From Octopus bimaculoides (Eukaryota), in NCBI RefSeq assembly GCF_001194135.2, contig NC_068982.1, positions 116,296,130 to 116,360,129 on the forward strand: a stretch of 64,000 nucleotides of DNA. Direction: 5' to 3'. Of the stretch, positions 5,519-39,603 are shown piece by piece. The notes beneath the pieces were generated by a model, which was given only the letters and a program-made list of their open reading frames with translations, was not told where the DNA came from and ran no database searches. The translations under genes and the position numbers were made by a program. Position 1 is the first letter of the stretch. The number at the start of each line of letters is the position of its first letter.

Positions 5519-5666
5519 ATGAGTGGCGGACAACCAAAGTCTTTGAGTTATGGAAATTCCCCTAACATTCCAATCTTTGAAATTGGAGGAAATGAAAATG
5601 AATTCGGAGTGGTCCAGTCTCCACATAGTGACAGTTATATCCATTCACATCTTCGAGACAGACAAG
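5519..5666 (+). CDS. Uncharacterised gene 1, first coding exon (MSGGQPKSLSYGNSPNIPIFEIGGNENEFGVVQSPHSDSYIHSHLRDRQ)
   Basis: Acceptor tttaattattttgcag ending 5486, ATG at 5519, donor CAAG|gtgaga at 5666 (phase 1). Joins in frame to the 6667 exon. Confidence 0.7.
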
Positions 5667-6666
5667 GTGAGATGATACTTTTGACAATGTTCACATCAGC
5701 TGATACTGCTGTGTATGCTTTCACAAACTTAACCTATTACTTGGTTTAGCTATCCATCTGGCTGTTGGTTACCATTAGCAGATCCCACTTTGCTGCAAGT
5801 ATTTGTTGCTAGGTCCCAAGTCTGAGAGAAAGATTGTCTGCTTGGTCATGGAACATGCATAATATAACAATACTGATGAACTTTTTCTAGTCCAGTGTGT
5901 TGAAATTTTAATTTTTTTAACTTTCTTTCTTTGGAGTGTCACATATATTCATGTATTTTAGTTTTAAGTAAATACTTAAAGATATGCAGAGTAGTGTTTC
6001 TTCAAAGTCCATCATGTATCACCTAAAATTCTGCAGTGTGATTGATATTTTATAAACAGAACTGTGTAGAAGTCCATAATGTGTGTGTGTGTATGTGTGT
6101 GTGTGTAAAAAGCAGTCATAAAGTAGGAATGATAATGTTGATGATGACAATGTATCAACTTCAATAGAGTCAGTATTTTTACATAAACTTTTTCCATATT
6201 GGCATGAATTGGACAAGACTTCATGAAGTAGCATTATTCTACAGGGAGAGTAGATTGCCAGGTTGCACATTGTTTTCTTGAACAAAACACTTTATTTCAC
6301 ATTGTCTCAACCTACTCAAGTGAAATGAATTCCAACAGTAGCTGGAGTTGACTTTGCAGTGGATTAGTTTCCCATCCAGAGAGGAGTCTTGTAACATCAG
6401 TTGCTTAAATACATGGGAGATGGGGTTCAGCTGCAGTCTAATGATTGTTTTGAGCTCAAGGTAGACTTTAACTAGATAATGAATGCTTTGATGACATGTC
6501 ATTCAATGTTGGCTTGATAGTAAACAACAACAATAGCAACTATGTTGATGATTTAAAGAAATGTGAGCAGATGAAGAATTTGTGCATTGTATTAATTATA
6601 TTGCTTAAATCAATATCAATTTTGAGGCCATTTCTAATGTATATTCTGTTTTATTTTATGTTTCAG

Positions 6667-7256
6667 CGAAAGGACCATGGGTAGATAAGGAAGCATTAAA
6701 ACCAATGGAAATTAACCTGAAACCCACCAAATTACCATCGTTAGTTCAACAAGAAAACAATCCACAGTTAACAAAGTCACAGAGCTCCAAAGAATTATCA
6801 GTACCAAAATTTTCCTCAGTCTTTGATGAATGTCAAGAGGAAATGTTCCAACTTGATGATGAGGCTGAAGATCTAATGCCTTTGACTCTCTCTCAAGCAA
6901 CAAAACAAAGGAAAATGTCAAAATCTCATGATGTATTGAATGAAACCATATTAGAGATGTCTCGATCATCTGAAACATGTGAAAAAAGCAAAAGTTCTTT
7001 GTATCGGTTCAAGAGCGATTCAAACTTGAATCATGAGAGGTCCGACATGACCCTTGTAGAGAAAGTTTCCTTATTGAATTTAACGGCGGCAAAAAATTCA
7101 GGAGATGTGAAACCCATGACCACTCGGCGCCAAGTATCCCATGAAAGCTTTGACTGTGACATCTCTGATTCCGAAAGTAAACTGAAGAATTGGTTCTTAA
7201 AAAAGCCAGTATCAATTTCAAAACGAGAGATCAATGCCATTGCACCATTTCCCTGA
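6667..7256 (+). CDS. Uncharacterised gene 1, terminal coding exon (total about 245 aa, ends KNWFLKKPVSISKREINAIAPFP*)
   Basis: Acceptor ttttatgtttcag; 590-nt open frame in AT-rich DNA; Ser/Lys/Glu-rich. C-terminal motif shared with 35152-35427. Confidence 0.85.
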
Positions 7257-10028
7257 TCTGCTGTTCATGTCTTGGTATTTGCTTTGTCGTTAATGTTCTG
7301 TTGGATCTTAAGATAAACTAAAACAATATTAAAACAGGAAGTATATTCTTCTGAACTCAAATATTGCTTTTAGTATGACAATCTACAGAAGAATCTCCAG
7401 AGATGTTAAAGCATCCTCTAATGTCAAGGCTTTTCATTATTGGATGTTTGAACTAAATTTTCTTTCTTTGTGATATTAATTTAATTTATCTATTTGTTTC
7501 CTTTATTTTATTTTGAAACGTTCAATTATGAAATTCCAACATGTACAAAAAAGTTATATGTGTATGCATACCACAATGTTTGGGTATAAATTACTGTGTG
7601 CATGCTTATATATATATATCGTGAAAGAGAGAAAGTGAGATGTTAGGGCATAAATGTATGCGTATACACTCACACACACATTACTGCTTAAACTTTAAAA
7701 CCCAGTACAGTAATATAATAACTGTATAAAATGAAATGACTCCTGAAACTGTATGTTCAGAAATTACCCCAATTTCACAGAATGTATATGAGTAAATAAC
7801 AAAGAGTATATTTTAAAATTCTAGTTTATTATAAAACATTGGATCATTGACTTGAACAGTTGCTCTTTGGTCCTTCTGATTTCTTATTATTTTCTGAAAT
7901 TTTTCTGAGGAAAGTGTTGCTCTGCTAATAATTTCTTTTATTTATTTTAATTCTTTTAAACATTAAAACAGGGCCAATATTTGTCAGCAGAATTGCTTCC
8001 ACCTCAGACTAAATATGTTTCAAAAATTACCTCCAACAAAAAGAAACCCCCTAACTTGTGCCTCTTGCAATATTCAAAAACCTACTGACCATTAATTGGT
8101 AGACTTAGAAAAATGCTCTTATGACTGATTTACAAATTATCTGAATTATAAAAATATTTAGAGGATCACTAAGTTTTACAGTGTGTGTGTGTGTATATGT
8201 GATTTGCATAAACATGTAGGAATCAAAGAGCAGGATGAAATAAATTCCTGTATCCAGCTTAGCACATGAGTACATTACCATTTTGTTCAGTTTTATGAGC
8301 AGATGCCATTGTATTGTTCAACTGTGCAAATGGTTTATTAGAATCCTATTTATTGTCTTATTTTATGTGATCCCACAGCGAAGACTTACCAATTTGTTAA
8401 GGCACTGCTCACCAATGAATGAATGAATTGTTTGCTATATGGATTTTGCATTTTCAAGAAATAGAATTCTTTTGTTTGTGAGAATTTCTGCATTTTGGTA
8501 GTTCTCTACTCTAAGATATGTAAAGAATAAGTTTTGTAATCTCTGTCTTTCACATACATCTGTATTCTGGATTGTTTGTGTAGCACAATGGTTCATGCTG
8601 AATTCCCTTCCTTATACCAGCTTTTGTGATACTGGAATGAGCTATGTCTAACATAAGTAGAAAAATTCATGTTGCCAGAATATGCAGCATTGTCAACTCT
8701 ATACTGGTTTTCTCTTAGAGTTTCTCATTTTCCTAAATATGTTGCCTTAATTATGGATACTCTTTGTTGAAAGTTAATAATTCTGTTTCCCTCCTTCAAC
8801 CTCATTATCCATAACAGAAGAAATTTCCACTATAACTGAATATGTAAACCAATTAAATAGACTTTTGTAAACAAGGGTAGAATCAGGTATCTAATGATAG
8901 ATGCCATCAGTGAATATGTTTCTTACATTAGTTATGTTATCATCAGAGTATATCACCCTCCTAGTTATTACTGGATGTCTTATGGTCAGGGTTTAAGGAG
9001 GTGAAGTTCTTCATCGCTCACTGATCTAGTAGACAGGTGAAATTTCTTCAAAAGGCTAGAGAAATATGTGGATACTGGGGACCTTTCAAGAAAGATGAGT
9101 AGACCAGTAAGTAGATAGATGACAAAGAGTAAATTTAGCTTGCTGCTGCTGTTTCTTGAGAGAACCTCCCTCCTTGATTGTGTATATTTATATAAGTATG
9201 TATATAGAATATTATATATATGCATATATCTATGTATATATATGTATATATATGTATAGCAGTAAAAACCTGTTCTAAAGTTACATTTAGTTTCTTAATA
9301 CTAAGGATACTGCTACAATAACAGTATTCCATTAAGAAAATCTTACGAAATCTACCACCTACGATGTCTCCTAAAGAGAGAGAAAAAAACAAAAAACAAA
9401 GGAAATTGTTTCAAAATCTGGTGACAATCTAATGTTAAATTGTGAAGAAGAAAAAAAAAACCTGTAAAGAATAAAAAAACTGCAGTTTAACATAACTATT
9501 GTTTGGGTCTTTTATAAAGCTTTGTTGTCAAATTTTCTTGTAATGTTAATGTGTTTGAATGATAGTGGTAAAAAATAAGCATAAGCGCTTTATCAATTGT
9601 AGAAGGAAAGCTGCACTAGTGTGAATATATTTTGAGTGTGAAGAAATAGTAAGGTCTGAACTCAGACAAAGGAACACAAGTGGTAAGACAATATGTGGAA
9701 ATAGGCTAAACTAGCTTGGAAAAGCAAATGTAAAAATGATGATGCTGAGTTATACAGTTCTTTATTGCATAGTATGTCAATATATCATGCCTGTTATGTT
9801 GCCATTAAAACATCAATTTTTTTATAACCTGGGTCTACCCTGGGGTTAAACTTCAATCGTCACAACAATTCTAATAATTTCTACTTTTTTATTGGATGAG
9901 AAACATTTCTCTAACAAGCAATATTTTAATGAAATCTTTGTTGTTTTAACATGGGCGACTGATAGGACAAATAAAGAAAGATATCTAACAGGTAAAGGGA
10001 GATAATTAAGGTGGGCTTCTAAATATTT

Positions 10029-10235
10029 TCTTTTACTTTTGTTTCAGTCATTTGACTGCGGCCATGCTGGAGCACCACTTTTAGTCGAACACATCGGCCT
10101 CAGGACTTTTTCTTTGTAAGCCTAGCACTTATTCTATCGGTCTCTTTTGCCGAACCGCTAAGTTATGTGGACGTAAACAGACCAGCATCGGTTGTCAAGT
10201 GATGGTGGGGAGGATAAACACAGCCACAAATACAT
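10029..10235. mobile_element. SINE 3' part (copies at about 39385-39565, 43465-43670, 23232-23305 inverted)
   Basis: TTTGACTGCGGCCATGCTGGAGCACC...TTTTGCCGAACCGCTAAGTTA...GGTTGTCAAG, recurring. Confidence 0.8.
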
Positions 10236-10242
10236 ACATACA

Positions 10243-10980
10243 TCATCATCATCATTTAACGTCCGCTTTCCATTCTAGCATGGGTTGCACGATTTGACTG
10301 AGGACTGGTGAACTAGATGGCTGCACCAGGCTCCAATCTGATTTGGCAGAGTTTCTACAGCTGGATGCCCTTCCTAATGCCAACCACTCCGAGAGTGTAG
10401 TGGGTGCTTTTATGTGCCACTGGCACGAGGGCCAGTAGGCGGTGTTTTTTACGTGCCACCTGCACAGGAGTCAGTCCAGCGGCATTGGCAACAAACTCGC
10501 TCGAATGTTTTGTTCATGTGCCAGTTAGGCTACGCTGGTAATGATCATGCTCAAATGGTGCTTTTTACATGCCATCGGCACGGAAGCCAGACAGTTGCTC
10601 TGGCAATGATCCTGCTCGGATGGTGCTGTTAGCGCTCCACTGGCACGGTACTAATCATCGAATTTGGTTTGATTTCGATTTCACTTACCTCAACAGGTCT
10701 TCGCATGCAGAGTTGTGTCCAAAGAAAGAAAGGTATGCATAAGTAGGCTGGCTACACCCCTGGTAAAGGCCACAGGTTATGGTTTCACTTGTCTTGCCGG
10801 GTCTTCTCATGCACAACATATTTCCAAAGGTTTCGGTCATTCGTCATTGTCTTGGTGAGGCCTAATGTTCAAAGGTCGTGCTTCACCTCATCCCAGGTCT
10901 TCCTGGGTCTATCTCTTCCACAGGTTCCCTCAACCGCTAGGGTGTGGCACTTTTTCACACAGCTATCCTCATCCATTCTT
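10243..10980 (-). mobile_element. RTE LINE 3' end with (GAT)n tail
   Basis: DEDSCVKKCHTLAVEGTCGRDRPRKTWDEV...WKYVVHEKTRQ followed by the same 3' UTR core as 13869-16255. Confidence 0.85.
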
Positions 10981-10981
10981 G

Positions 10982-11055
<74 letters not shown>

Positions 11056-11374
11056 NNNNNNNNNNNNNNNNNNNNNNNNNNNNNNNNNNNNNNNNNNNNN
11101 NNNNNNNNNNNNNNNNNNNNNNNNNNNNNNNNNNNNNNNNNNNNNNNNNNNNNNNNNNNNNNNNNNNNNNNNNNNNNNNNNNNNNNNNNNNNNNNNNNNN
11201 NNNNNNNNNNNNNNNNNNNNNNNNNNNNNNNNNNNNNNNNNNNNNNNNNNNNNNNNNNNNNNNNNNNNNNNNNNNNNNNNNNNNNNNNNNNNNNNNNNNN
11301 NNNNNNNNNNNNNNNNNNNNNNNNNNNNNNNNNNNNNNNNNNNNNNNNNNNNNNNNNNNNNNNNNNNNNNNNNN

Positions 11375-11565
11375 GCGGGTGACACGTAAAAGCACCCACT
11401 ACACTCTCTGAGTGGTTGTTGTTAGGAAGGGCATCCAGCTGTAGAAACTGCCAAATCAGACTGGAGCCTGGTGTTGCCATCCGGTTTCACCAGTCCTCAG
11501 TCAAATCGTCCAACCCATGCTAGCATGGAAAGCGGACGTTAAACGATGATGATGATGATGATGAT
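11375..11565 (+). mobile_element. RTE 3'-UTR fragment / RTE-tailed SINE (related copies at about 2050-2243 +, 12800-13020 -, 17398-17660 +, 27838-28040 -, 41133-41270 -)
   Basis: Shared core GGCGTTAGGAAGGGCATCCAGCTGTAGAAAC...GGAAAGCGGACGTTAAACGATGATGAT. Confidence 0.85.
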
Positions 11566-11566
11566 A

Positions 11567-11607
<41 letters not shown>

Positions 11608-13407
11608 ATATATATACAACAGGCTTTTTGTAGTTTCCATCTACCAAATCCACTAGCAAGACCTGAGATTGTAGTAGAAGGCACTTGGGACTGAACCCGG
11701 AACCTTGTGGTTGGGAAGCAAACTTCTTACCTCACAGCCACTCATTTTGTTTAATTTTTTTGTATTTTCTTCATATGAACCTTACACAGATGATCACATA
11801 CATTAACTATACAACACATACACACAACAGTACATTTCTGTGTTACTCTTTTAAAACCTGGGAGAATCAGTTTTAAAGTGAAAGAAACAGCCTAGTTGTG
11901 TAAGATAAGAATTATTTTGAAATATAATAATTCTGCTTGTCAATCCATTACTTAGCTTGTTGGCAGTGCTTTCACGTGATTAGTGAAGAAGATGGAGAGA
12001 GAAGCATCAATGACATGAAGTAGAAGGAACATAATATTTTTTACGTGGTTAAAAAAGTTAGTTGAAGGTAGTGATATAGGGTAGGAGAGTTGAAGATATA
12101 ATTTTAGCAGAAGGGTGATGTTCCGATGGTTAAAGAAAGGCACAGAGAGAGATGATGGTGGTGAGTGAATATTGAAAAGTGTATTCTTCTTTTAATTGAA
12201 CTAAGTTTTTTTTATATCACATATCACTTAACGCATGCGCATAAGTGCAATTCCATGAAATATTCATGCTTATTTACATGGCATATATATACAATTTAAC
12301 TAAAGGTATCATGTACAGCAATTTTTTTTTCTTTAAGGGAAAAATGGAAAAATAAGTGAATATTTATTTTGTGAGTGCTGTGTATTGTGTCTATAAAACT
12401 GCATAAAATATATAAGGTGCATTAAGTAATCATCGTATTTTAATTTCTTTCACTTTTCAATGAGTGACTATCTTTCTATACAGACACAACATGCTATGCT
12501 TTTAGCTTTTTTTTTATAAAGTTTACCAAAATAACTCAATAGGTTTACCATTAATTCTCTGAAATATTCACAGGTCCTGATAGTACAAATGAAATTGCAA
12601 ATTGGATTCAGAGAATCAAGCAGAAGTCACAGAAAGCACTTCCACATGAAATCGGCTATCAGTTAAATTAAGATTTAGTTTAACTTGTCTATGCAACTGA
12701 AAACCCAGGATACAGAAGTAGTAAAATATTCCCACAAAGAGTAAATAACAATCATAAAATCAAGAGGTATGAGAGATGAATACAAATTATTTCCAGGATG
12801 CCATCATCATCATCATCATTATTTAATGTCCAATTTCTGTGGCATGGATTAGATGGTTTGACTGGGGCTGGCAAGCTAGAGAGCTGCACCAGGCTCCATT
12901 GTCTGCTTTGACATGGTTTCTATGCTTAGATGATCTTCTTAAAGCCAACCACTTTACAGAGTGTACTGGGTGCTTTTTATGTGGCACCAGCATTGGTGGG
13001 GTTGCCTAGTAATTTGCAAGACAAAGATCTCTTAGCTGAGAGATAGAGTGGAATCATGGGATATGGCTCTGTGTCAGGCAAAAGATTAAAGTATAATAGA
13101 GGGACAGAGATAGTTGTCTTTCTGTAGAGGAGATACATGGCTACTCCAGTAGGTCAAGGAAAATGGGAGAAAGGTAGAGAAACAGAGAGAAATAGACAGT
13201 GTTGGTAATATATTGAGGTCTACACACAGGAAAAAGTGGATAGGTGAAGTATAAGTAGCACAGAGGGGATAGAGAGGGGTGTTCCATGAGAGTGTGAAGG
13301 GATATGCCTGTAGCAAGTGATGGTGAGAGGAATTGCGGTGGCTGGAAGGGGGATAGGAAAGATATGTGAGGGGTGTGGAAAGAATGCAGATAGGCACATA
13401 AGAATGA

Positions 13408-13868: not shown

Positions 13869-16255
13869 ATATTAGATTCAAGAAATTTGATGAGAGGGAG
13901 GAGGAGCTACAGACCTCGGACATAGAGGGTGGCTGGAAATTCCTAGGGGACAACTCACTAAGTGCCACAGACCAAGTCTGCGGATGGTGCAAAGTCCCCT
14001 CCAGACCTAGAGTAACGTGGTGGTGGAATAATACAGTAGGCAAAGCCATTAGAGCAAAGAAATAGGCATGGAAAGCCTGGAAAAGTGAGGTAGCAGGGAA
14101 CTGTGCCAGATAGCCAGGAGGGAGGCTGGGTGACAGGTATACATAGCCAAGGGAAAAGCAGATAAAAAGTTTGTCATTGTCCAGCGATGTGAGGACCAAA
14201 CAACTGAAGTATTTCAGATTGCAAGACAATGTATGAAAGAAAATTGTGATGTCACAGGAGAGAAATGTGTCCGCATGGATGATAGTGTACTTGCTTTTAA
14301 TGTTTCTGAAAAGAAAGAAGCTTGGAGAAGCCATTATGAAAGACTGCTGAACGTGGAGAATAAATGGGAGGAGGAGAGCCTGCCAAATGTTGACACAGTA
14401 GAGGGACCAGTTATCCGAATAGATAAAGAAATTAAGGGTATGAAGCCAGGAAAGGCCCCTGACCCATCAAAAACCCCTGTTGAGATGCTTAAAATATCTG
14501 GTGGCATGGATAATGGCCTATGCTTAGATGAGATGCAGTTCAGTTTTGTCCTGGGTAGATGCTATATTCCTGGTATGGCAACTGCAGGAGAAATACCTAG
14601 CCAAAGATAAACCCCTATACTTGGCTTTTGTTGACTTGGAGAAAGCCTTTGACAGGGTCCCCCATTCCTTTATCTGGTGGGCGATGCAGAAACTAGGGAT
14701 TGACGAATGGTTAATAATGGCTGTACAGGCCCTATACAGAGATGCTGCTAGTAAGGTTATGGTTGGCAATGAGTATAGTGAAGAATTCAGGGTAGAAGTA
14801 GGGGTCCACCAAGGATCAGCCCTCAGCCCCCTCTTATTCATCATAGTCCTCCAGGCAATAACAGAAGAATTCAAGACAGGTTGCCCCTGGGAGCTCCTCT
14901 ATGCTAATAGCCTGGCCCTCATAGCAGAGTCACTATCAGAAATAGAGAAGAAATTGCAAGTGTGGAAGCAAGGTTTAGAATCGAAGGGCCTTAGCGTCAA
15001 TGTCGCAAAAACCAAAGTCCTAGTAAGTAGGAAGGTGAACATATCACACACCCCTTCAGGTAGATGGTCCTGCTCGATCTGTAGAAAAGGTGTAGGTAGA
15101 AACTCCATAAGATGTACCCAGTGTAAGCTATGGACACATAAGAGGTGCAGCGACATCAAAAGAAGATTAACTGGAAAGATAGCTTTCGTGTGTGGCAGAT
15201 GCACAGGGGCAATAAACACCACAGATGCTCAGAAAACAGATTCCATCACTTGCCAGGGGGAGAAACTAGAAGAAGTTGATAGCGTCTGCTACCTAGATGA
15301 CCAAATCTGTAGTGCTAAGAGAGTGTTAACAGTAGAATAAGAATAGCCTAGGCGAAGTTCAGAAAGCTTCTAGCCCTACTGATAACAAGGGGCCTCTCAG
15401 AGTGAAAGGTAGATTGTATGATGCATGTGTGCAAACTGCCATGCTTTATAGCAGTGAAACATGGGCTGTGACTGCTGACGACATGTGTAGGCTCGAAAGA
15501 AATGAAGCTAGCATGATCTGCTGGATGTGTAATGTCAGCGTGCACACATGACAGAGTGTAAGCACCCTGAGAGAAATGCTGGATATAAGAAGAATCAGAT
15601 GTGGCATGCAAGAGAGACGTCTGCACTGGTAAGGTCATGTACTACAGATGGATGAGGAGAGCTGTGTGAAGAAGTGCCACTCCCAAACAGTGGAAGGAAC
15701 CCGTGGTAGAGGGAGGCCCAGGAAGACATAACCAGTCCACTCAAAAAGTACCTTTGGAACGTAGGGCAACATGCCGTGCATGAGTTGACCTATTGAGTCA
15801 AGTACAACAACATCAAAATCAAATCAAACCACAATCAAAATGGAAATTGTAGTTGTGGATGATACCAGCGTCGCCTGTCTGGCTCCCCATGCCAGTGGCA
15901 CATAAAAAGCACCATCCAAACATGGTCGATGCCAGCCCCCTCAGCCCAACTGGCTCCTGTGCTGGTGGCACGTAAAAAGCACCATCCGAACATGGCTGAT
16001 GTCAGCACTGCTTTGACTGGCTCTTGTGCTGGTGGCATGTAAAAGCACCAACCAAATTGTGGTCAATGCCAGCCCCCTCTGTCTCCCATGCCGGCAGCAC
16101 ATAAAAGCACCATCCAAACGTGGTCGATGCCAGCCTCCTCTGACCCCTGTGTCTTGGAGTGATTGGCATTAGGAAGGGTATCCAGCTGTAGAAACACTGC
16201 CAGATCAGATTGGAGCCTGGTGCAGCCTCCTGGCTTCCCAGGCCCCCTGGAGCTG
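13869..16255 (+). mobile_element. 5'-truncated RTE-clade LINE (degenerate RT ORF plus 3' UTR with tandem subrepeats)
   Basis: TWWWN, LAFVDLEKAFDRVP, GVHQGSALSPLLF, WELLYA motifs; Cys-rich PHD-like insert; C-terminal GRGRPRKT; stops and frameshifts. Confidence 0.95.
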
Positions 16256-18326: not shown

Positions 18327-18706
18327 TGGTTGGCACTCCGTCGCTTACGACGACGAGGGTTCCAGTTGATCCAATCAACGGAACAGCCTGCTCGTGAAAT
18401 TACTGTGCAGTGGCTGAGCATTCCACAGACACGTGTACCCTTAACGTAGTTCTCGAGGAGATTCAGCGTGACACAGTGTGACAAGGCTGGCCCTTTGAAT
18501 TACAGGCACAACAGAAACAGGAAGCAAGAGTGAGAGAAACTTGCGGTGAAAGAGTACAGCAGGGTTCGCCACCATCCCCTGTCGGAGCCTCATGGAGCTT
18601 TAGGTGTTTTCGCTCAATAAACACTCACAACGCCCGGTCTGGGAATCGAAACCGCGATCCTACGACCGCGAGTCCGCTGCCCTAACCACTGGGCCATTGC
18701 ACCTCC
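18327..18706 (-). mobile_element. Full-length tRNA-derived SINE (second copy 49527-49901 -)
   Basis: Head GGAGGTGCAATGGCCCAGTGGTTAGGGCAGCGG...GGTTTCGATTCCC with A/B boxes; two near-identical copies. Confidence 0.9.
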
Positions 18707-18959
18707 ACAGATAGATAGATAGAGCCCTTCAATCACTTTTGTAACTTTTTGCTGACTGAAAAGAACAATAAAAGAATGTAAATATATAAAATGTATATGT
18801 GTGTGTGTGTACCTGGCTGTGTTAACAAATAAACTATAGCTATTACATTCTTCTACTGCAAGAGATTTTGAATAAATAAATAAATAAATAAGAAAAGAAA
18901 TAAACACTTTGAAAATTCCGTAATTTAAGACCGGCTCTCATCGACTACAACTCTGTGAA

Positions 18960-19002
18960 CTTCGTGAATGTTCGTAAATGTTCGTGAAATTAAGCACTTC
19001 CG
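18960..19002. promoter_or_regulatory. Heat-shock element (six nGAAn/nTTCn units) plus ETS-like CACTTCCG
   Basis: cTTCg tGAAt gTTCg tAAAt gTTCg tGAAa, five of six units perfect; CACTTCCG at 18995-19002; CpG-retaining region. Confidence 0.5.
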
Positions 19003-20054
19003 CTTTTATCGGTTGTCTTCAAACCTCATTTTATTTCTTAAAAAGTTCTTTCTTGGATGTATTTGCTACAAAAATGGAATTGGTAAATATATATATATCC
19101 ATGCTTAATTGCTTTTGAGCTTTCATATATTTAATATTCTTTAATAACCTAATTTATATAGTTTTTTTTCGTTTAAATGTCTGTTTTTAGGCTTTGTCTA
19201 AAAAATTCCCTTTATAAATTTTTGCGTAATGTCGTTATTGCAAACACCCATCCATCCTGGTTTATCATGATTTTTACCTGATTTTACCATAATTCTATCT
19301 CGCTATCAATCTATTTATGTGAAATTATATATATATATATTACATGCACTAAGTAAAAGCTTTGTGAATTTTATTTATTGCTTATGTTTCTATTTAATCC
19401 CTTTGCCGTAAATACTATTGTTCACTGTTCACTTTCTGTCACACAGATGTATGAGCGTGATGACAGCGGTCTCCAAACTTATTTTATCGTGAATTCCTAT
19501 ATGATTTTCCCCTAAATTTAAGAACCCATATTATATGGACAACCCCTCGCCACTCTAATTTTAATGAGACATGAGACATAGCGTGAGATATATTCATAAA
19601 AAAGGGTGAAAAGTTTCATTACTTTGGAATGGTGAATGCCATTTTTTATTTACAGAATTGTATTTAAGAAATTTTTTTCGAAACTCCAGGATTTTTTTTT
19701 TTTGTGAAAAATACTGGCATAAGGTGACAATCTGGTTGTTTTCTTGGCCCTTATCTTCCTGATTGAGTAGATTTTAAGATTAAAAAAAGCATTCCAAATG
19801 TAATTATGAATGTGATGTTCTTTTTTTACTATTTTAAGAGGGTAGAAACACCATTTTATAATCACAAGTAGGCTCACATTATTGTATTTATTTATCTCAT
19901 ATAGCTGAAAGTGACTGGAAATTCAGCGCTGTACAAACCTTTGGCACTTTTCTCTATTACTCGACAGATTTCCCTACTCATCAAACATGAAGCATAATGG
20001 GGCTAATTAATATACTCTTCTAAATTACCCTGTCTCTAGTGTGTGTGTGCGCCC

Positions 20055-20098
<44 letters not shown>

Positions 20099-23740: not shown

Positions 23741-24488
23741 TAGACACTGAGGGAAAATGGCCGTAACTTTTTTATTTTTTGATTTTGACGATTTTCGTTT
23801 TCGATAATGTGTTCTATATGTCACGGTCATGCGATTCCCCCCTAAAAAAATTTTGGACCACACACGGGGTGGGGGGTGGGGGGTTTGGCGATTTTCATTT
23901 TTAACATTGTGTTCTACATGTTCAGGTCGTACGAATAGCCTTCTCGCAACTTAGATGTGAAAATGAACGGCTTACATTTATATTGAAACAGAAAAAGGAT
24001 CATATGTGGAGTCCCCACCACGAAACTTGATATGTTAGAAATAACAGCTAAACGCGGACAATCCAAATCTTGCATTGGTCCAGATGGACTATATGTAAAT
24101 AAATATGAAGGAAAAAATGCGCTTTGGCAAACGGGGTTAGGGTAAACCTAACCCTAACCAGATTTGACTGTTATTNNNNNNNNNNNNNNNNNNNNNNNNN
24201 NNNNNNNNNNNNNNNNNNNNNNNNNNNNNNNNNNNNNNNNNNNNNNNNNNNNNNNNNNNNNNNNNNNNNNNNNTTCAGATTACATATAGTCCATCTGGAC
24301 CAATGCAAGATTTGGATTGTCCGTGTTTAGCTGTTATTTCTAGCATATCAAGTGTGGGGTGGGGAGGGGGGTCAAAAATTTTTTTTAGGGGGAATCGCAT
24401 GACCGTGACATATAGAACACATTATCGAAAACGAAAATCGCCAAAATTAAAAAATAAAAAAGTTACAGCCATTTTCCCTCAGTGTCTA
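23741..24488. mobile_element. Foldback element with long inverted arms
   Basis: TAGACACTGAGGGAAAATGGC at both ends in inverted orientation; arms complementary over more than 200 bp, with part of the left arm missing from the right; centre partly a gap. Confidence 0.75.
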
Positions 24489-26311
24489 ATTCCAATGTCC
24501 ACCTCTCATTCAAACTATATCCTTAAAAAAAGACACTGAGTGACGTTACAGGGAGGCAGTGGAAGTACACTATTGCTGGTGAGCGGGGTGATGGAATGTC
24601 TTTCATCATATGTTCCTTTGGTCTCTGCTAAACAACTGCGAAGTATCCTATAGTATTGTGCCCACTGTTACACGATTTTCTCTTTAGTTCTGACGTGGAT
24701 TGTTTAAGAATTTCTTTTAAGATGTATGAACTTGTTTTCCTACATAACAAACCCATCTATATACTCACCATGTGATAAAGCTAACTGAGGGACAGAGAAA
24801 TTAACTCAAGATAAGCACGTTGTTAACGAAAGTGAGTGACGAGAATCTATGAAGTGCCGATTGCATCTCCTCAGCCATGCCTGTATCTCAGTCTAGTTGA
24901 GGACCATACTGCGCACTCTAACTTGCAGTGATTACTTCATATGGAAGGTATAGTGTGACACTCTACATATATTACTCTCTTTCCCTTGTTCTATCTCTAT
25001 ACGTCCATAGATTCTGATGTGGGCCACAGCAGAAGCAAGCGAGGTGAACTCAAAGCCCAACAGTTGCTGTTTGTGTACATTTATTGTTAGATATGAACCC
25101 TGTGGTGGTTGAAGCATTCTGCAGTAAGAAGCTCTACTCGTCATATGCCCAGCTGGTCTTTTATTTTTAATATATTTTGTTTCGTTTTGTAGAAGTTGTT
25201 TTAATGCGTAGTTATATGGAGAATTCAGACATTCCTCCTCATCAGTAGTTTCACGACTATACAGTGAAAACTGTTTGATGACTATTGATTATCCCAACGT
25301 TGTTGAGGTTGGAATATAGAGGAATGCAGGTGTAAATCATAAATTCAAAATTGCGTGTGGTTAGACAGCTCAACAGGTTAGAAGACTTCATGCTTCAATG
25401 TCTGCTTTGGTATTCTATGACTGTGTGCCTTTCCTAATGCCAACCATTTTGTAGGAATATTCTCTAATGAAAAGTTTAGCTTTGTGGACTATCTCTAGTA
25501 CTTAGGACACATCACTGGACATCACATCTTATGAGGTCAATAAAAAAAAAACTATGCTAAGGACTAAAATTCATATTATTGTGACTTTTTCTCTTTCTAC
25601 ATACAAGATTCTCTTGTGAGTTCCCTCTTCACTTTGTCTAAGCAACAGTGTTATTCATGAAAAATTTTATTTAGCTCTTCAGTTCTTATTCTAAAACCTT
25701 GTAATTAAACTTCATAGTATTTTGCTGTAACTTAGAATTCTGTTCACACATTGATGACGTTGGCACACTTAAGTTGAAATAGTAACCAGCAAAGAATTCT
25801 TTACACTTTTTAATTTTTTAAAGTCATCTATCTCTCTAATTCTGTCTGCCTCTCTCCTTTCTTTCACTCATACATGGCCTAGTTCATTGGTTCTCATTAG
25901 GTGGTGGTGAGGAATGAAAAGTAGGTGGGCAAATTGCTGTTTACTTAAATTGGATGGTCTTAAACTTTTTAAACTTGTTTAGCACCTTGGTGAAAAAAGA
26001 ATTACATTAATGCAAACTCTATTTTGCCTTCTCATTAAAGGAGACAGAGTGGGAGGCAGGGTCTAAAACATTTTTTTTTTTGTAGATAATAGAGGTGAGA
26101 GTCTGGTATACTGTCAACAGTACTGCAGTGTGTGTATAGTTAGGTTACTTAATTCTCAAACTGCTTAATATACCCAGCAATAAATAGACATCACATTAAT
26201 TTCATTTCACTTTGGTTTTCTCTTGCTGTAAGCAGCAGTAGCACTGTAAATTGGCAAGTGTTTGTTTTTCATTGCTTAGTTCAGCTACTGTTACATGTAG
26301 GAACTTATTAA

Positions 26312-26581: not shown

Positions 26582-27181
26582 CTAAAGAAAAGTATGTCTT
26601 TTAACAAATTGGCTTGAACACTGCATGAAGACAGTATCTTTAGTGGTACTATAACAACAGCACAGGTCATATATATATATATATATATATCATTTATATC
26701 CTTTCATTTTTACCATGAAGCATAAATTGGATTAGTCTCACTGCATCTCTATATATTACAGCCCTTCATTGTATGGCTCACACAACAGAAAACTTGGTCA
26801 ACACTCTTATGTATGGCATCATTTTTACTGCTGGGTGCATTTATTATACCACCAGCATTAGAGAAGTTGATAGTGTTGGGTGTCAAGACTAATGTATCTT
26901 CACTCATTCAATATCTTTTTTTTTCTTTCTTGACATTTTTACAGCTTGATGCCCTTCTCCTCACCAATCACTTCACCATGTGTCATATAAATAAGTTCAA
27001 CTCCTAGGTGAAATCTTATTGAGCAGGACTTATGACCATGTTATCTTTTTAGGAATACCTAGAAGTACAATATCTAACGTATCTTTTACTTTCTTTTTTT
27101 TTAGATAGAAGAGAGAGATTGAGGGAGATTTGACTCCTGTTTCTGGTAGGTTAAATGGTTATGTAGATGCTCTGTTAGCTC

Positions 27182-27216
<35 letters not shown>

Positions 27217-29699
27217 TTTAACTAAAATTTGCTAAGGTGGTGCCTTAGCATGGCTGTAGTCTAACGACTGAAACAAGTAAAAGACACACATACATAATAA
27301 TTTAACTTTTGTTTTATGCTGTCATAGATTGGGTGAGCAGTAAACCAATGTTCTACACATCTCTGCCATTAACAACATATCACTCTGGCCTTGACATTGC
27401 ATCTAGGGAGTGCTTCCAGCTGTTTAAAGTTTCCTATTGTTGCTGGTGGCCTTGTATTTATCTTAGACATCCTTACTATTATTCTTGGCATAGTCCTTGA
27501 TAGAAACAGTACAGTGTCAGTTTGGTCCTTGACAGAAGTGTTTGCACTTTTGCCGTGTCCCTCTAAATTCAATTAACTTTGCCTGTGGTTCTTGTGGGGA
27601 TCAATAAGCACGGGGCAGTTACACCCCTCACATACGAAGCAGATTTTCAATGATTGGATATATTTCTTTTTGTCAGCCTGCACCCGTTTCCAAGCAAGTT
27701 AATATTTCCCCATAGCCGGACATGTTTTCACAGAATATTAGAAATGAATGATACTGCGCTTGTGACAGACACTTGTTTACAGCTATCATGTGGTGTCAAG
27801 GCAAGAAGACACACACACACATTCATATATTTATATATATCATCATCATCATTTAACATCCATTGTCCATGCTGGCATGGGTTGAATGGTTTGACCAGAC
27901 CTGGCAAGCTGCACCAGACTCCAGTCTGATTTGTTGTGGTTTCTCTGGCTAGATGTACTTCCTAATGCTAGCCACTTCAGAGTGTGCTGGGTGCTTTTAT
28001 GTGGCACTGCATGGGCACTTGTACATGACCTTGTCACAATGCTTTTCACCACCAGAGGGACCAGTCTTAATACTTCTGCTGCAGAGACTGGTCCCTCTGG
28101 TGGTGAAAACCACTCATGGCAGACGCACAGTGGCCTCTTTCAGTTTCATTCTACCAAATCCACTGAAAAAGCTTTTGTTGACTTGAGTCTGTAGTAGGGG
28201 ACTCTCGCCAAAGGTGTCATGCAGTGGGACTGAACTCAAAACCATGTGGTTGACAAGCAAACTTCTTAACCACTCAGCCAAGAGTCAGTTATTTATCAAT
28301 GAATATTTCATATGTCAGGGATCTGAATATGTGTAGATTTTTTGTACCGTTTATTAATAAATGAGTGAAACTGTTGTAAATAAAATGTTTACTTGTAAAT
28401 GAAACAATATTGTTTACAAATAACAGTTAATTAGAATAGTTAGTATATAGCACTAAAGTTATTGAGTAGTTGAATGATTTTTAAAATTATAATTTGTAAG
28501 CAGAAGTGAAATGTTAGAGTTTTCCTTAAAGCTAGTATGTTTCTTAGCCTTTGTTCTGTTCAGATTTCACTGTGCGCAACACTCCCTTGGAGAATATGGA
28601 ACAGATAGTGAGTGAGGAATAGGGAAAAGTAATTTCTTAAACAACCTCTTATATCTTCTTTATAGGCAGCTTACTCATCATCATCATTTCACTTGCTGAT
28701 TAATTCTTAAAATCAAACGTCATGATATAAGCTTGTGTATGCTAGAAATGTTAAGATAACCTATGTCAGAAATGTCAAGGTAATGTGAGAGCCAACGTAA
28801 GCACCTTAATCCATTAATACAGTGACTAAGTCTGCCTTGATGTGTATATATATATATATATATATATTATATAAATATCAGAATTCTGCAAACCACATGA
28901 ATAATTTGTGTATATATTTCTTCTCTCCTGATTTTCTACCATTGTTTTAGAGACAAACTTTTCTTTTGGAGAGGATGCTGGACCATTCAAATTATTTTCT
29001 TCATTCAGGCCAGATACTGTAAACTAATGTGTGCCGAATTATGTCTTGTTCAGAGTTATAGAATTTGAACTCACAACTTTTGAGTCTGGCGTCTTAAGTT
29101 TCAAGCCATTGAAAGAGCCTCTACATCAGTCATGAGTAAACTGCAGCTTGTGAGACTTCCTGAATGGCATATGCCAATCAAAAATTTACCTTGAATTTTT
29201 TTTATTTATTATTTTTTTTTTTTTTATGCAGCTTGTCTGAAGTTGAAAATGGTTGCCCATGCCTGCTTTACATGATAGCTTGACATGCTAGAAATAGGTT
29301 AAATTTCTCTCAAATCACAATATTCTTCCATTTTACAAAATTGTGCATAGCTAAGGTACAATAAATATAAACTGTTGACTTGTCCTTGCTTATTTCTGAA
29401 TTCATTTCTTCTCTCATGGTAATCCTACTGTTTAAATTGTGAAGTCAATCCTGTTAGTTTTCTTCTAAAATTGTGTTTCTGTCATCTGGTTGGTGTTTGT
29501 TCTTCCTGGTTAAAAGTACATAAAGTGCAACTTTGGCTAATTCAACTGGATTATCTTCCAGTTGTCAAGGTTGTAGAATTGTGATCTGGCTTAATTTAAT
29601 AGGATTCTTTTACTTGCTAATTTGATCACTTAATATATTAGATTATGAGATTTCATACAGCTCAGTGGCAGATACCAATTGAATAGTCATTTTCATTAT

Positions 29700-32427: not shown

Positions 32428-33435
32428 TATAACTGTTGTCCTTCAAATAAAGCTGTGACTTCTTAAACTTACTTTCTGCACCCATCAAAGTTGCTGAAAT
32501 AAAGGAAAACTGAAATATAAAATGAACATTGAGGAATTAATTCATTAAAATTGCTTTATTTTTAATGTTATTTATCTAATATTTCTTTCACTTTTTTTTT
32601 TTTTTAGATTTCAGACACATATCTGCTGCAAACACAGACACCCAATGTTGATTCCTTAAGATCGTTTTTATTGTGAACTAATCCAGGTATCTATTGATTT
32701 CATTAAACATTCTTTTGAATATGTGAATGGTTTGAGTGCATTAGCTAGTAGTGTCTGATACAAGAGAAATAGCCTTGATCAAGCAGAACCTACAATCAAA
32801 ACAATTCAGCCATGACTGTCATGACCTTTCTCTTATGACATTATATCTAATATTACACTATTTCATGTCTTTTTTTTTTTTTTCCTTCAAAGACAATAAA
32901 CCACTGTTTCCAGCAGGTAGAATCAGGCTCGCTTATTGGTTTGTTATGCCTAAGAAACAGTTATTGGTATCTTCTATTATGTCGTAATATCATTTGTTAC
33001 TTTGAAGCTTCTATCTGCTGTATAATATAACAGTAATATTAACTTGGAAATATTTTGATGGAATACTAGTTTTTCTTGATCCTAAGCTCATGGCCTATTT
33101 AGTATAATCTGGTGGTGTGCAGTGGCAACAGGAGATAGTGATTACATAGGAGAATTTGATATACATTTTCTCTAGTTCGGTAATCTGTAAAGAAGTTTTG
33201 TGTTTCTATTAAAGTTCATCACTGACCTGTTGATATATATCTGAGAAACTAGTATTTTTTTCTTTCTAATTTTGATTTTGAATCCTAGACACATGTATGG
33301 TCATGCAGATAAAGATTTCACTTCATAACTGCATGATTTTGGGTTCCATCCCAGTGTGTGAAACTATGAGCATGTGTTTTCTACTATAAGCCTCAGATTG
33401 GCTAATGTCTTTTGGATGAAATTGGTAAATGGAAA

Positions 33436-33467
<32 letters not shown>

Positions 33468-33470
<3 letters not shown>

Positions 33471-34020
33471 GTCCCAAAATTAAGGAAATCAACTTTTTCT
33501 AATTTTACCAAAGCAAAATATTGTTATAATTTCGGGTCTGAGTGTTGCAGTGCAATAGTAAACACAATCAGGACACTGCCACATTTATTCGATATGAGCA
33601 CCTCTGTTTCAAATCACAGCCTTAAGTCTAGGTGTGAATGCTTCACATGTGGCACGTAGCTGTTCTTGCTGAATCGAAGCCCATTCCTGGCGCAGTTTTG
33701 CCTTTAGAGCATTGAGCTAAGCATGAGGAGTGCTTGAGACCCACATCTCCAAAATGGACCAAACAGAAAAATCCACTGGGTTAAGATGGGGGTTTCTTGA
33801 GGGCCATACATCCTTACCTATGAATGACAATGTTTTTCTGAATTCAGTGTTGTACCTGTTTGGAGCTGTGGGGATGGTGTCAAGTCCTGCCAGACACTCC
33901 AAGGTATATCTTGAAAGGGCTCATTCGCCCATGGAAACAGTTCAACTTCCAGAATGTTGCTAAAGTATCACTGGGTGTTAATTTTAACACCCGAGGGCAC
34001 AAAAACAAGAGGAGACCTTC
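33468..34020 (-). mobile_element. maT/DD37D-type Tc1/mariner transposase C-terminal remnant with one TIR
   Basis: GRSPLVFVPSGVKIN...WPSRNPHLNPVDFSVWSILE...LRATCEAFTPRLKAVI*NRGAHIE; CAGTGTCCCAAAATT end at about 33468. Confidence 0.8.
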
Positions 34021-34519
34021 GAATGGCTGTCACTGGAGGTGAATGTAATGTGTGATGAACAAGGGTGGAGGTGCAGTTGAGGGAAATAAGTGTGGAGATG
34101 GGTAAGGTGAGATATATAGTAGTGTTTCAGGAAGGAGAATAGATCAGAACATTGCTGAGTGATGTGCAAAGTGTTGGAGTAGTGGGGGGGGGGGNNNNNN
34201 NNNNNNNNNNNNNNNNNNNNNNNNNNNNNNNNNNNNNNNNNNNNNNNNNNNNNNNNNNNNNNNNNNNNNNNNNNNNNNNNNNATAGTAAGCGAGGGGGGG
34301 GGGCATGAAACCTAGAAAGTTCTTTTCTAGGTCACTTTCCTGTGCAAAGTTTCTTCATGGAAGACCAGCAGTTGTCTGGGTAGAAAATCTCCCGTTCTCC
34401 CTCCCACCAATGTCATCCAAGGGAACAAAACACATGTAAACAAAAATAGATGTATCGACATCCTTTACTAATCCTAAACAGTACTGGGATGCCTGCCATC
34501 AATAAGTGCAGGATGAAGA

Positions 34520-34880
34520 TCAGATTGTACAACACTTGTTAGAACTGTGAAGTTGCTTAGTAGCAAGATGGGCCTTAACTGCTGAAGACTTGAAAGAAAC
34601 ACTGTGATGGGTGTGTAGTGTTTGTGTGCATGAGCACCAGAGTATAAATGAACTAAGAGAAAATCTGGGTATTAAAGGAATCAGGTGTAGTGTGCAAAAG
34701 AGGGAGCTGTACTCTAAAGGGCCAGTGAGGCATATGGAGGATGACTGTTGCATATAAGGGTGCTACATACTTCAAATTAATGAAAGTTGTGGAACAGAAT
34801 GACCAAAGAAGGCTTAGGAGAAAGGAGGGAAGGTTGACCTGAAAATGCTACATCTCCCAGAGGAAATAACAAAAGGAAAA
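34520..34880 (+). mobile_element. Old RTE RT C-terminal remnant
   Basis: Degenerate KIRLYNTC...WALTAEDL...LRENLGIKGIRCSVQKRELY similar to 15400-15700. Confidence 0.6.
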
Positions 34881-35022
34881 AAACATACTGACATCAATAT
34901 ATGGTGCTGCAGAATGCCTGTCCACCTCTACCAAAATGTACTCTAATACATGGATAGTATTTAAGAAACTGTGATTGTGTGTGTCTGTGTAATATATATA
35001 AAATCCCATCACTGTTAACCAC

Positions 35023-35081
<59 letters not shown>

Positions 35082-35151
35082 ATGATTGTATATGTGTCTA
35101 TTGCTTTTGTTTTTATTTTTGAAAATTTTTATGTTTTCAATTAAATTTCAG

Positions 35152-35427
35152 AAATTTTCTGGACTTCTAGATTTCCCAATGTACACCATGTCTGGACCAG
35201 AGAGAAAGATTTCCTCCAGCATGGAGGAATCTTCACTTCTACAGAAATTCTCTAAGCCCTCGACAAACCATTCGGAGCCGATCTCTATTCTTAAAAGAGA
35301 TTCCTCGGACCATAAGCAACCTGCATCAGACTTGAATTCCTCGGCCAGTGCCATTTCCTGGTTTTTCAAAAGATCCATGCCAATGTCAGAGCGAGAAATA
35401 AATGCTATGGCACCTTTATCATCTTGA
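35152..35427 (+). CDS. Uncharacterised gene 2, terminal exon (paralog of gene 1; ends ISWFFKRSMPMSEREINAMAPLSS*)
   Basis: Pyrimidine-rich acceptor ending atttcag at 35151; 91 open codons; clear C-terminal similarity to gene 1. Start uncertain (internal ATG in MYTMSGP or an upstream exon). Confidence 0.75.
   Translation, partial: KFSGLLDFPMYTMSGPERKISSSMEESSLLQKFSKPSTNHSEPISILKRDSSDHKQPASDLNSSASAISWFFKRSMPMSEREINAMAPLSS

Positions 35428-39559: not shown

Positions 39560-39603
<44 letters not shown>

What the first reader, a model, noticed from the sequence alone, without database searches (positions are those of the whole stretch)
5519..35427. Two tandem paralogs of an unassigned family sharing a C-terminal WFxK[KR]xxxxSxREINA[IM]AP motif
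Gene 1 ends KNWFLKKPVSISKREINAIAPFP* and gene 2 ends ISWFFKRSMPMSEREINAMAPLSS*. The rest is divergent, Ser-rich and probably disordered (245 aa versus about 80-95 aa). They lie in the same orientation 28 kb apart, and both have an MSG start option. A conserved terminal motif on unrelated disordered bodies suggests a docking or degron module. It weakly recalls the RDLNVLTP end of vertebrate KIAA1191/P33MONOX (recollection only).
Basis: partly seen in the sequence, partly recalled or inferred. Interest (0 to 1): 0.75.

Follow-up and report, generated by a model that had tools for sequence, protein, structure and literature searches.

The report
Cephalopod-only disordered protein pair, shared tail
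Two neighbouring octopus genes, one long and annotated as "uncharacterized" and one an apparently unannotated 79-82-residue small ORF, are ancient paralogs of a protein family detected only in octopus, argonaut and cuttlefish-type cephalopods, and they share a strongly conserved 20-residue C-terminal motif of unknown partner.

Summary
The window is Octopus bimaculoides DNA. Gene 1 (LOC106871499, "uncharacterized protein", 245/269 aa) and gene 2 (79-82 aa ORF) both end in WF.K[KR]....S.REINA.AP, on the + strand, 28 kb apart. Both are transcribed and spliced at GT-AG sites. None of the four assembly gaps touches an exon.

- The bodies are not unrelated. Gene 2 is collinear with the last ~115 residues of gene 1, starting at its RKMS site.
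- The "MSG" starts are not homologous.
- Gene 2's whole CDS lies in its last exon, behind a 5' leader that carries upstream ATGs. Its protein is absent from a 15-billion-protein collection that holds gene 1's NCBI entries.
- The P33MONOX resemblance fails (hhalign probability 0.3%).

A cuttlefish (Sepia esculenta) has both a long and an 89-aa short paralog. Its short gene also lies convergent to a VMAT gene. The duplication therefore predates the octopus-cuttlefish split, and the motif is under purifying selection.

An exhaustive profile search of 1.84 billion representative proteins found only these four cephalopod clusters. There is no Pfam or PDB match. AlphaFold models are disordered except for two short helices on the motif.

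Best reading: a lineage-restricted disordered family with a docking-type linear motif, in which the short paralog is a truncated microprotein-like version. The function is inferred, not shown.

The parts
5487..5666 (+). Gene 1 (LOC106871499), first exon present in the window. ATG of the 245-aa isoform is at 5519. In the 269-aa isoform the whole exon is coding and continues from an exon upstream of the window.
   Evidence: Sequence shows acceptor AG at 5485-5486 and donor GT at 5667-5668. RNA contigs cover 5479/5485-5664 joined to 6665. NCBI proteins P0001 and P0002 are 100% identical. The MSALVD exon is not in the window.
6667..9481 (+). Gene 1 last exon. It holds codons 50-245, stop 7254-7256, and a ~2.2-kb 3' UTR.
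   Evidence: RNA contigs are continuous over 6665-9481 in four runs. The ORF was translated.
7191..7253 (+). Gene 1 C-terminal motif WFLKKPVSISKREINAIAPFP.
   Evidence: These columns are invariant or near-invariant across 6 long orthologs and 2 short paralogs. AlphaFold predicts helices at 244-252 and 259-262 of the 269-aa isoform.
18989..19082 (+). Gene 2 alternative first exon A' (non-coding leader).
   Evidence: RNA contigs of runs X9, X27 and X28 hold 18989/18993/19002-19082, then exon B, then the last exon. Donor GTAAAT.
24545..24947 (+). Gene 2 alternative first exon A (non-coding leader, 9 ATGs in this exon; the 10th upstream ATG of this isoform lies in exon B).
   Evidence: Run X14 contig of 1433 nt: positions 1-403 map to 24545-24947. 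Donor GTATAG.
32608..32686 (+). Gene 2 exon B (79 nt, non-coding). It carries a TAA in the frame of the motif ORF, 10 codons before the junction.
   Evidence: The 30-nt loose end of the RNA contigs before 35149 maps uniquely to 32654-32683. AG/GT borders are visible. Translation.
35152..36102 (+). Gene 2 last exon, as far as single RNA contigs run (probably on to ~36.8 kb). It holds the whole CDS, 35179 or 35188 to 35427.
   Evidence: RNA contigs cover 35149-36102/36104 in four runs, and a further contig covers 36075-36821. Raw RNA reads cover the ORF. The 82-aa ORF is the longest ORF of both transcript isoforms.
35359..35424 (+). Gene 2 C-terminal motif WFFKRSMPMSEREINAMAPLSS.
   Evidence: 16 of 19 core residues are identical to the Sepia short paralog, with 6 synonymous codon changes. 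AlphaFold predicts helices at 60-64 and 71-76, which is the highest-pLDDT stretch.

Best explanation
These are two real, transcribed paralogs of a protein family detected only in coleoid cephalopods.

The long member (gene 1, 245/269 aa) is an intrinsically disordered, Ser-rich protein built from short conserved islands:
- NENEFGVVQSP
- acidic YDE..EEMFQLDDE
- RKMS
- F[KR]SDSNL
- the helix-prone MSLVEKVSLLNL
- the C-terminal WF.KKP..[VI]S.RE[IM]NAIAPF

The short member (gene 2, 79-82 aa) is an N-terminally truncated copy that starts at the RKMS island. It keeps only RK[MI]S, LQKF and the C-terminal motif. It is encoded entirely in the last exon of a three-exon transcript, behind a leader that contains upstream ATGs.

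The duplication happened before octopods and decapods (cuttlefish) separated, and both copies have been kept since.

Inferred mechanism: the C-terminal ~20 residues are a short linear motif that forms two short helical turns when it binds. It docks both proteins onto the same, still unknown, partner. The basophilic-kinase-type sites (RKMS, RFKS, RRQVS) would make the proteins phospho-regulated. The short paralog lacks the N-terminal and acidic modules, so it would act as a minimal or competing (microprotein-like) version of the long one.

Shown here: paralogy, transcription, splicing, conservation, restriction to cephalopods, predicted disorder. Inferred only: translation of gene 2, docking, phospho-regulation, competition.
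For: Identity and splicing:
- Gene 1 is identical to NCBI O. bimaculoides LOC106871499 isoforms. Orthologs are found in O. vulgaris (90%), Argonauta (84%) and three decapod-type sequences (42-45%).
- RNA contigs confirm the splicing of both genes.

Homology between the two genes:
- The collinear alignment of gene 2 with the C-terminal half of the long proteins has invariant columns, among them the Ser of RK[MI]S, L and F of LQKF/LYRF, W, S, R, E, N, A, A and P. In-window tblastn gives E 3e-7.

Restriction to cephalopods:
- Exhaustive hmmsearch of 1.84e9 representative proteins returns only three long clusters plus P0008.
- P0008 is an 89-aa protein ending SWFFKRSVAMSEREMNAMAPLSS. It comes from transcriptome runs that two papers describe as Sepia esculenta (PMC10466719, PMC10571815).

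Orthology of the short genes:
- Within the 19-residue core, short-short identity is 16/19 and long-long is 14/19, against 11-12/19 between long and short within a species. The two groups therefore predate the split.
- The Sepia short transcript overlaps a convergent VMAT gene. The same VMAT gene lies convergent to gene 2 in the window (exons 62416...38492, - strand).

Coding signal in gene 2:
- The ORF is open in both species and ends at the same stop.
- Differences in the core fall 4/0/6 on codon positions 1/2/3, with 6 synonymous changes.
- Nucleotide similarity between the octopus and Sepia transcripts is confined to the ORF and stops at the stop codon.
- The chance of an 82-codon open frame at the window's stop frequency is about 0.008.
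- It is the longest ORF of both isoforms.

Disorder:
- AlphaFold gives mean pLDDT 46.9 (gene 1) and 60.0 (gene 2), with pTM 0.14 and 0.19. In the short paralog the only helices lie on WF.K and REINA; the long paralog has the same two helices plus two others, at the KSHDVLNET and MTLVEKVSLL stretches.
Against: - There is no evidence of translation of gene 2 (no proteomics or ribosome profiling). Its leader has 3 (A' isoform) or 10 (A isoform) upstream ATGs. No version of its protein (82, 79 or 68 aa) is in the 15-billion-protein collection that holds gene 1's NCBI entries.
- The short paralog is known from only two species.
- No binding partner is known and no known motif class matches.
- The two helices show no significant amphipathic moment.
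- The alignments are shallow (7-8 sequences), so the low AlphaFold confidence is weak evidence of disorder.
- The RK[MI]S site is not kept in the Sepia short paralog, where Met is the start codon and no R stands at -3 in the protein.
- The apparent restriction to cephalopods may partly reflect fast divergence of a disordered protein rather than true absence elsewhere.
Confidence: 0.55

Rival explanations
1. The conserved C-terminal segment is not a partner-docking site but a turnover or sorting signal: a C-terminal degron, or a membrane or vesicle targeting segment. The two paralogs would then share a fate or location rather than a binding partner.
For: The motif sits at the extreme C-terminus in all eight sequences, with a fixed distance of 2-3 residues to the end. 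It contains an aromatic-basic patch, WF.K[KR], of a type common in membrane-proximal segments. Gene 2 is conserved next to a synaptic-vesicle transporter gene (VMAT) in two lineages, though this is only positional.
Against: The last residues themselves vary (FP, FPS, FSS, LSS), which is unlike most C-degrons. The segment has no hydrophobic stretch and no significant amphipathic moment. Gene adjacency says nothing about protein localisation.
Confidence: 0.2
2. Gene 2 is a transcribed relic of a partial duplication (a non-coding RNA or decaying pseudogene). Its open frame is not translated.
For: It is not among the annotated proteins in the collection searched. The ORF is short. The leader carries upstream ATGs, and one isoform has a 509-nt leader. 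The copy lacks the N-terminal half of the family.
Against: An ORF of similar size with the same stop is kept in Sepia. Octopods and decapods diverged hundreds of millions of years ago (my own knowledge; no date was computed here). The two share 48% identity overall and 16/19 in the core, with no second-position changes and with synonymous changes. Nucleotide conservation ends at the stop codon. In the runs examined its RNA contigs have higher depth than those of gene 1 (213.6 against 17.4 in X9, 440.4 against 133.7 in X14).
Confidence: 0.1
3. The tail R-E-[IM]-N-A-[IM] acts as a kinase pseudosubstrate, resembling the R-R-N-A-I of the PKA inhibitor PKI. The long paralog's LVEKVSLLNL would act as a PKI-type nuclear export signal. 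The family would then be a kinase inhibitor or shuttle.
For: Only motif-level resemblance, recalled from knowledge of PKI: N-A-I preceded by a basic residue, and an L-x3-V-x2-L-x-L pattern in the helix predicted at 203-212 of the 269-aa isoform.
Against: There is no match to the PKI family or any other Pfam family at E up to 10. The double Arg at P-3/P-2 that defines a PKA pseudosubstrate is absent, replaced by R-E-[IM]. The export-signal-like helix is missing from both short paralogs. Short consensus matches of this kind are common by chance.
Confidence: 0.05
4. The family is a divergent member of the vertebrate P33MONOX/KIAA1191 family.
For: The C-terminal octapeptides look alike: REINAIAP against RDLNVLTP, with R, N and P identical. 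Real P33MONOX sequences do end in KPRDLNVLTPTGF.
Against: None of 7 members hits PF15302 at E up to 10. hhalign of the family profile against 10 P33MONOX sequences gives probability 0.3% and E 0.19, and the only aligned stretch is not at the C-termini. The hmmsearch of 1.84e9 proteins returned no protein beyond the four cephalopod clusters at E up to 0.001, so nothing P33MONOX-like was recovered.
Confidence: 0.03

Closest known systems
MicroProteins (miPs) and small-ORF paralogs derived from larger proteins (for example plant LITTLE ZIPPER, animal Id proteins). Comparison from general knowledge.
   Same: The short paralog has under 100 residues. It arose by duplication and truncation of a longer protein. 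It keeps the best conserved presumed interaction segment and has lost the other modules.
   Different: Known microProteins keep a folded dimerisation domain, and their targets are known. Here the retained part is a ~20-residue linear motif in a disordered chain. Neither the partner nor any competition has been shown.
Lineage-restricted ('novel') cephalopod genes annotated as uncharacterized proteins (LOC106871499 and its orthologs).
   Same: Gene 1 is exactly such an entry. Orthologs are found only in Octopus, Argonauta and decapod transcriptomes or genomes.
   Different: Here the family gets an anatomy: conserved islands, a C-terminal motif, an ancient short paralog, and conserved position next to VMAT.
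P33MONOX / KIAA1191 (Pfam PF15302).
   Same: A largely disordered ~300-aa protein with a conserved extreme C-terminal peptide of similar flavour, R[DE][IL]N[AV][IL][AT]P.
   Different: No profile similarity. The rest of the sequence has no counterpart. The family retrieved here was tetrapod sequences only.
PKI (cAMP-dependent protein kinase inhibitor, 76 aa). Comparison from memory only.
   Same: A small disordered protein with an N-A-I containing basic peptide, and (in the long paralog) a leucine-rich export-signal-like helix.
   Different: The order of elements is reversed, the Arg-Arg pair is absent, and there is no sequence-family match.

Membership tests
P33MONOX / KIAA1191 (PF15302) | Significant match to the family profile over the body of the protein. 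| tested here: not met
   hmmscan of 7 members against Pfam at E up to 10 gives no PF15302 hit. hhalign A1 against A2 (10 real P33MONOX sequences) gives probability 0.3%, E 0.19.
P33MONOX / KIAA1191 (PF15302) | Invariant C-terminal KPRDLNVLTPTGF. | tested here: not met
   Only R, N and P of the octapeptide coincide with REINAIAP. hhalign does not align the C-termini.
MicroProtein / small-ORF paralog of a larger protein | ORF under ~100-120 aa, transcribed, homologous to part of a larger paralog. | tested here: met
   The ORF is 79-82 aa on a spliced transcript and is collinear with the last ~115 aa of gene 1.
MicroProtein / small-ORF paralog of a larger protein | ORF conserved as coding sequence in other species. 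| tested here: met
   The Sepia esculenta 89-aa ortholog has the same stop. Codon-position pattern is 4/0/6, and nucleotide similarity ends at the stop. Only one other species was available.
MicroProtein / small-ORF paralog of a larger protein | The protein is made and interferes with, or shares, the partner of the larger paralog. | not testable with these tools
   No proteomic, ribosome-profiling or interaction data were available.
PKI-type kinase pseudosubstrate inhibitors (PF02827) | Family profile match, and an R-R-x-A/G-I pseudosubstrate with Arg at P-3 and P-2. | tested here: not met
   No Pfam hit. The motif reads [KHE]-R-E-[IM]-N-A-[IM] in all eight sequences.
Coleoid-restricted orphan family (working definition for this report) | No detectable homolog outside coleoid cephalopods. 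| tested here: met
   Profile hmmsearch of 1.84e9 representatives of ~15e9 proteins gives 4 hits. Three clusters are traced to cephalopods by source names or papers (Octopus, Argonauta, Sepia esculenta), and the rest are assigned to decapods by similarity only. The limit is HMMER sensitivity on disordered sequence; cephalopod genomes themselves could not be searched.

The most novel reading that the evidence does not exclude
The short paralog is a translated microprotein, kept since before the octopod-decapod split, that uses the shared WF.K[KR]....S.RE[IM]NA[IM]AP tail to compete with or substitute for the long paralog on a cephalopod-specific partner. This would be a previously unrecognised linear-motif and receptor pair invented in coleoids. 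Its conserved position next to VMAT might hint at use in aminergic neurons.
Probability: 0.15. Interest if true: 0.6.

Novelty: new member of a known kind. Interest (0 to 1): 0.4.

Why it matters
Coleoid cephalopods have many lineage-restricted genes whose functions are unknown. This family now has a defined anatomy that can be tested:
- a set of conserved islands;
- a 20-residue C-terminal motif kept in both paralogs since before octopods and decapods separated;
- a small-ORF paralog that is absent from the annotated proteins in the collection searched.

The result adds a probable missed protein-coding gene to the O. bimaculoides annotation. It also provides a clean bait, the tail peptide, for finding a partner. 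It does not bear on a long-standing open question, and no function has been shown.

Tried and rejected
- Pfam scans of both last-exon products and of all seven family members: nothing meaningful. There were only single-member hits between E 0.005 and 0.1 to unrelated families.
- PDB sequence search with the family profile: nothing.
- Word-indexed homolog search with the gene 2 exon: no candidates at all. This is uninformative, because P0008 shares eight 5-residue words with the query and still was not returned, so short proteins seem not to be reachable by that index.
- Exact look-ups of the 82-, 79- and 68-aa versions of gene 2: absent from the collection.
- P33MONOX hypothesis: rejected.
- Looking for upstream coding exons of gene 2: exon B carries an in-frame TAA, so none can contribute.
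- Looking for remnants of the N-terminal half of the family upstream of gene 2, or in the Sepia short transcript: none.
- Second family copy in the 20.6-kb decapod genomic locus L004: none.
- Synonymous variation among five Sepia transcripts: they are all the same species and identical in the ORF, so no information.
- Spanning the gap 11056-11374 with DNA contigs: repeats on both sides, inconclusive.
- Amphipathic-helix test of the tail: not significant.
- Literature search for the locus names: no paper.
- One read-laying run was lost to a sequence filter at 32574-32616.

Full report
**What is there**

A six-frame scan finds the peptide REINA exactly twice in the 64-kb window, both on the + strand. 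One is at 7224 (...KNWFLKKPVSISKREINAIAPFP*) and one at 35392 (...ISWFFKRSMPMSEREINAMAPLSS*). The quoted sequences, the coordinates 5519 and 35427, the shared orientation and the 28-kb spacing are all correct.

**Gene 1**

- The ATG is at 5519 and the exon ends at 5666 (donor GT).
- The last exon starts at 6667 (acceptor AG) and the stop is at 7254-7256, giving 245 aa.
- This protein is 100% identical to [quoted passage not shown]. A 269-aa isoform X2 starts in an exon upstream of the window.
- RNA contigs of four runs join 5664 to 6665, the same junction, and run on to about 9481.
- Orthologs were found in O. vulgaris (90% identity), Argonauta hians (84%), and three decapod-type sequences at 42-45%.

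**Gene 2**

- RNA contigs start at 35149 and run to 36102 or beyond.
- The 30 nt that precede them in the RNA map uniquely to 32654-32683. This defines a 79-nt exon B, 32608-32686, with AG/GT borders.
- Upstream of exon B the transcripts use either exon A (24545-24947) or exon A' (18989-19082).
- The contig lengths add up: 403+76+954 = 1433, and 90+76+954 = 1120. The contigs contain no other exon.
- Exon B has a TAA in the frame of the motif ORF, 10 codons before the junction, and no ATG follows it. The CDS can therefore only start at ATG 35179 (82 aa) or ATG 35188 (79 aa, MSG, better Kozak context).
- This is the longest ORF of both isoforms, behind leaders with 10 or 3 upstream ATGs.
- No version of this protein (82, 79 or 68 aa) is in the 15-billion-protein collection that holds gene 1's NCBI entries. 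The ORF therefore seems to be unannotated.

**Assembly gaps**

- Gap 11056-11374 lies between the genes.
- Gaps 21677-21876 and 24176-24273 lie in gene 2's first intron (A' isoform). The second is 272 nt upstream of the observed start of exon A.
- Gap 34195-34282 lies in gene 2's last intron.
- No exon or reading frame crosses a gap. Spliced RNA links the flanks of three of the four gaps in order and orientation.
- The join at 11056-11374 could not be checked, because both flanks are high-copy repeats. The adjacency of the two genes therefore rests on the scaffold.

**The two genes are paralogs over more than the tail**

- tblastn of each protein against the window finds the other locus over about 85 residues, at E 6e-6 and 3e-7.
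- In multiple alignments, gene 2 is collinear with the last ~115 residues of the long proteins: ERKIS with RKMS, LLQKF with LQKF/LYRF, EPISIL with EKVSLL, then WFFKR....S.REINA.AP.
- The Met-Ser start of the short proteins aligns with the internal RKMS of the long ones. The shared "MSG" is therefore coincidental.
- The short gene is an N-terminally truncated copy.

**Distribution and age**

- An exhaustive profile search (hmmsearch, no word index) of 1.84 billion representatives of about 15 billion proteins returned four proteins. Three are long-paralog clusters. The fourth is P0008, 89 aa, ending SWFFKRSVAMSEREMNAMAPLSS.
- P0008 is carried by transcript contigs of runs that two papers identify as Sepia esculenta (PMC10466719, PMC10571815).
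- Run SRR8281679 carries P0008, and a run with a neighbouring accession number, SRR8281695, carries the long paralog P0006. That they belong to one study or species is inferred from the accession numbers only.
- In the 19-residue core, short-short identity is 16/19 and long-long is 14/19. Long against short within a species is 11-12/19. The duplication therefore predates the octopod-decapod split, which from general knowledge lies hundreds of millions of years back.
- The 3' end of the Sepia short transcript overlaps a convergent gene whose product matches VMAT1/2 structures at E 1e-61. The same gene lies convergent to gene 2 in the window, with exons from 62416 to 38492 on the - strand. Microsynteny thus supports orthology.

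**Selection and coding signal in gene 2**

- Between octopus and Sepia, the core block shows 6 synonymous codon changes. Nucleotide differences fall 4/0/6 on codon positions 1/2/3.
- blastn similarity between the two transcripts is confined to the ORF: 103 nt at 78% identity, ending at the stop codon, plus a 21-nt block at LLQKF.
- The chance of an 82-codon open frame at the window's stop frequency is about 0.008.

**What kind of protein**

- There are no Pfam hits and no PDB relatives.
- Ser content is 14.7% and 25.6%, and about two thirds of residues are polar or disorder-promoting.
- AlphaFold gives mean pLDDT 46.9 and pTM 0.14 for gene 1, and mean pLDDT 60.0 and pTM 0.19 for gene 2.
- Gene 1's model has helices only at KSHDVLNET, MTLVEKVSLL, KLKNWFLK and KREI. 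Gene 2's has helices only at SWFFK and EREINA, which is also its most confident stretch.
- The alignments are shallow. This is consistent with disorder but is not proof of it.

**Interpretation**

The best-supported reading is a coleoid-restricted, intrinsically disordered family. Its most constrained element is a C-terminal two-turn linear motif, shared by a long multi-module paralog and a truncated small-ORF paralog. I infer that the motif docks both proteins to a common partner, and that the short one is a minimal or competing version. That is an inference from the anatomy. Translation of gene 2, the partner, and phospho-regulation at the RKMS-type sites are all untested.

Rival readings are:
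- a degron or sorting signal;
- a non-coding relic, which is disfavoured by the conservation pattern;
- a PKI-like pseudosubstrate, which rests on motif resemblance only and lacks the defining Arg-Arg.

**Comparison with known families**

Retrieval gave 561 hits at E up to 0.001, and all 120 listed carry PF15302. Ten diverse ones were aligned, and the profile-profile comparison with the family gave probability 0.3% and E 0.19, not at the C-termini. The family is not a P33MONOX member.

The nearest known kind is the microProtein or small-ORF paralog of a larger protein. The structural criteria for that kind are met. The functional one could not be tested.

**Verdict**

- Novelty is modest: a new, lineage-restricted family member pair, including an apparently unannotated small ORF.
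- Interest is moderate.

Noticed in passing
window 38492-62416, - strand: There is a vesicular monoamine transporter (VMAT, SLC18A1/2-like) gene here. Coding exons are seen at 62416-62339, 61828-61763, 59867-59730, 57905-57855, 47027-46881 and 38581-38492. It is convergent with gene 2, and the same arrangement is seen in Sepia esculenta transcripts (L005-L008).
   Followed up: partly
window 14134-15337, + strand (GC-rich block about 12-18 kb): A retrotransposon fragment lies between the two genes. An ORF of 270 codons carries a reverse transcriptase domain (RVT_1, E 3e-20) followed by a PHD finger.
   Followed up: partly
window 18989-19082 and 24545-24947: Gene 2 has two alternative non-coding first exons 5.5 kb apart. 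Both splice to the 79-nt exon B (32608-32686). Different RNA runs assembled different ones.
   Followed up: yes
window 10277-10643, 11400-11741, 17214-17555, 18240-18923, 27060-27335, 28716-28991, 33432-33675, 34896-35139, 39532-39775: These short segments have word depths in RNA assemblies thousands of times above their surroundings, which marks them as very high-copy, transcribed repeats (SINE-like or simple-repeat elements). They also flank the assembly gaps.
   Followed up: no
window 36946, 36992, 38735, 13647, 15175: RNA contigs of some runs differ from the DNA by A>G at these places, among them the likely 3' UTR of gene 2. This could be A-to-I editing, which is common in cephalopods, or polymorphism. 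No such difference was seen in either CDS.
   Followed up: no
window 1-5486: Gene 1 transcripts carry 105-343 nt of upstream exon sequence that does not map to 1-11000. The first coding exon of the 269-aa isoform (MSALVDISNFVEQ) is not in the window either. Gene 1 therefore starts beyond the window's left edge.
   Followed up: partly
L005 1723-1776 and window exon B/last exon junction (32661-32686 + 35152-35178): In both species the frame of the short ORF is open for 18-19 codons upstream of the first ATG, with no ATG, back to a stop. Both stretches contain D-R-F. This is too little to call homology, and a non-AUG start was not examined.
   Followed up: no
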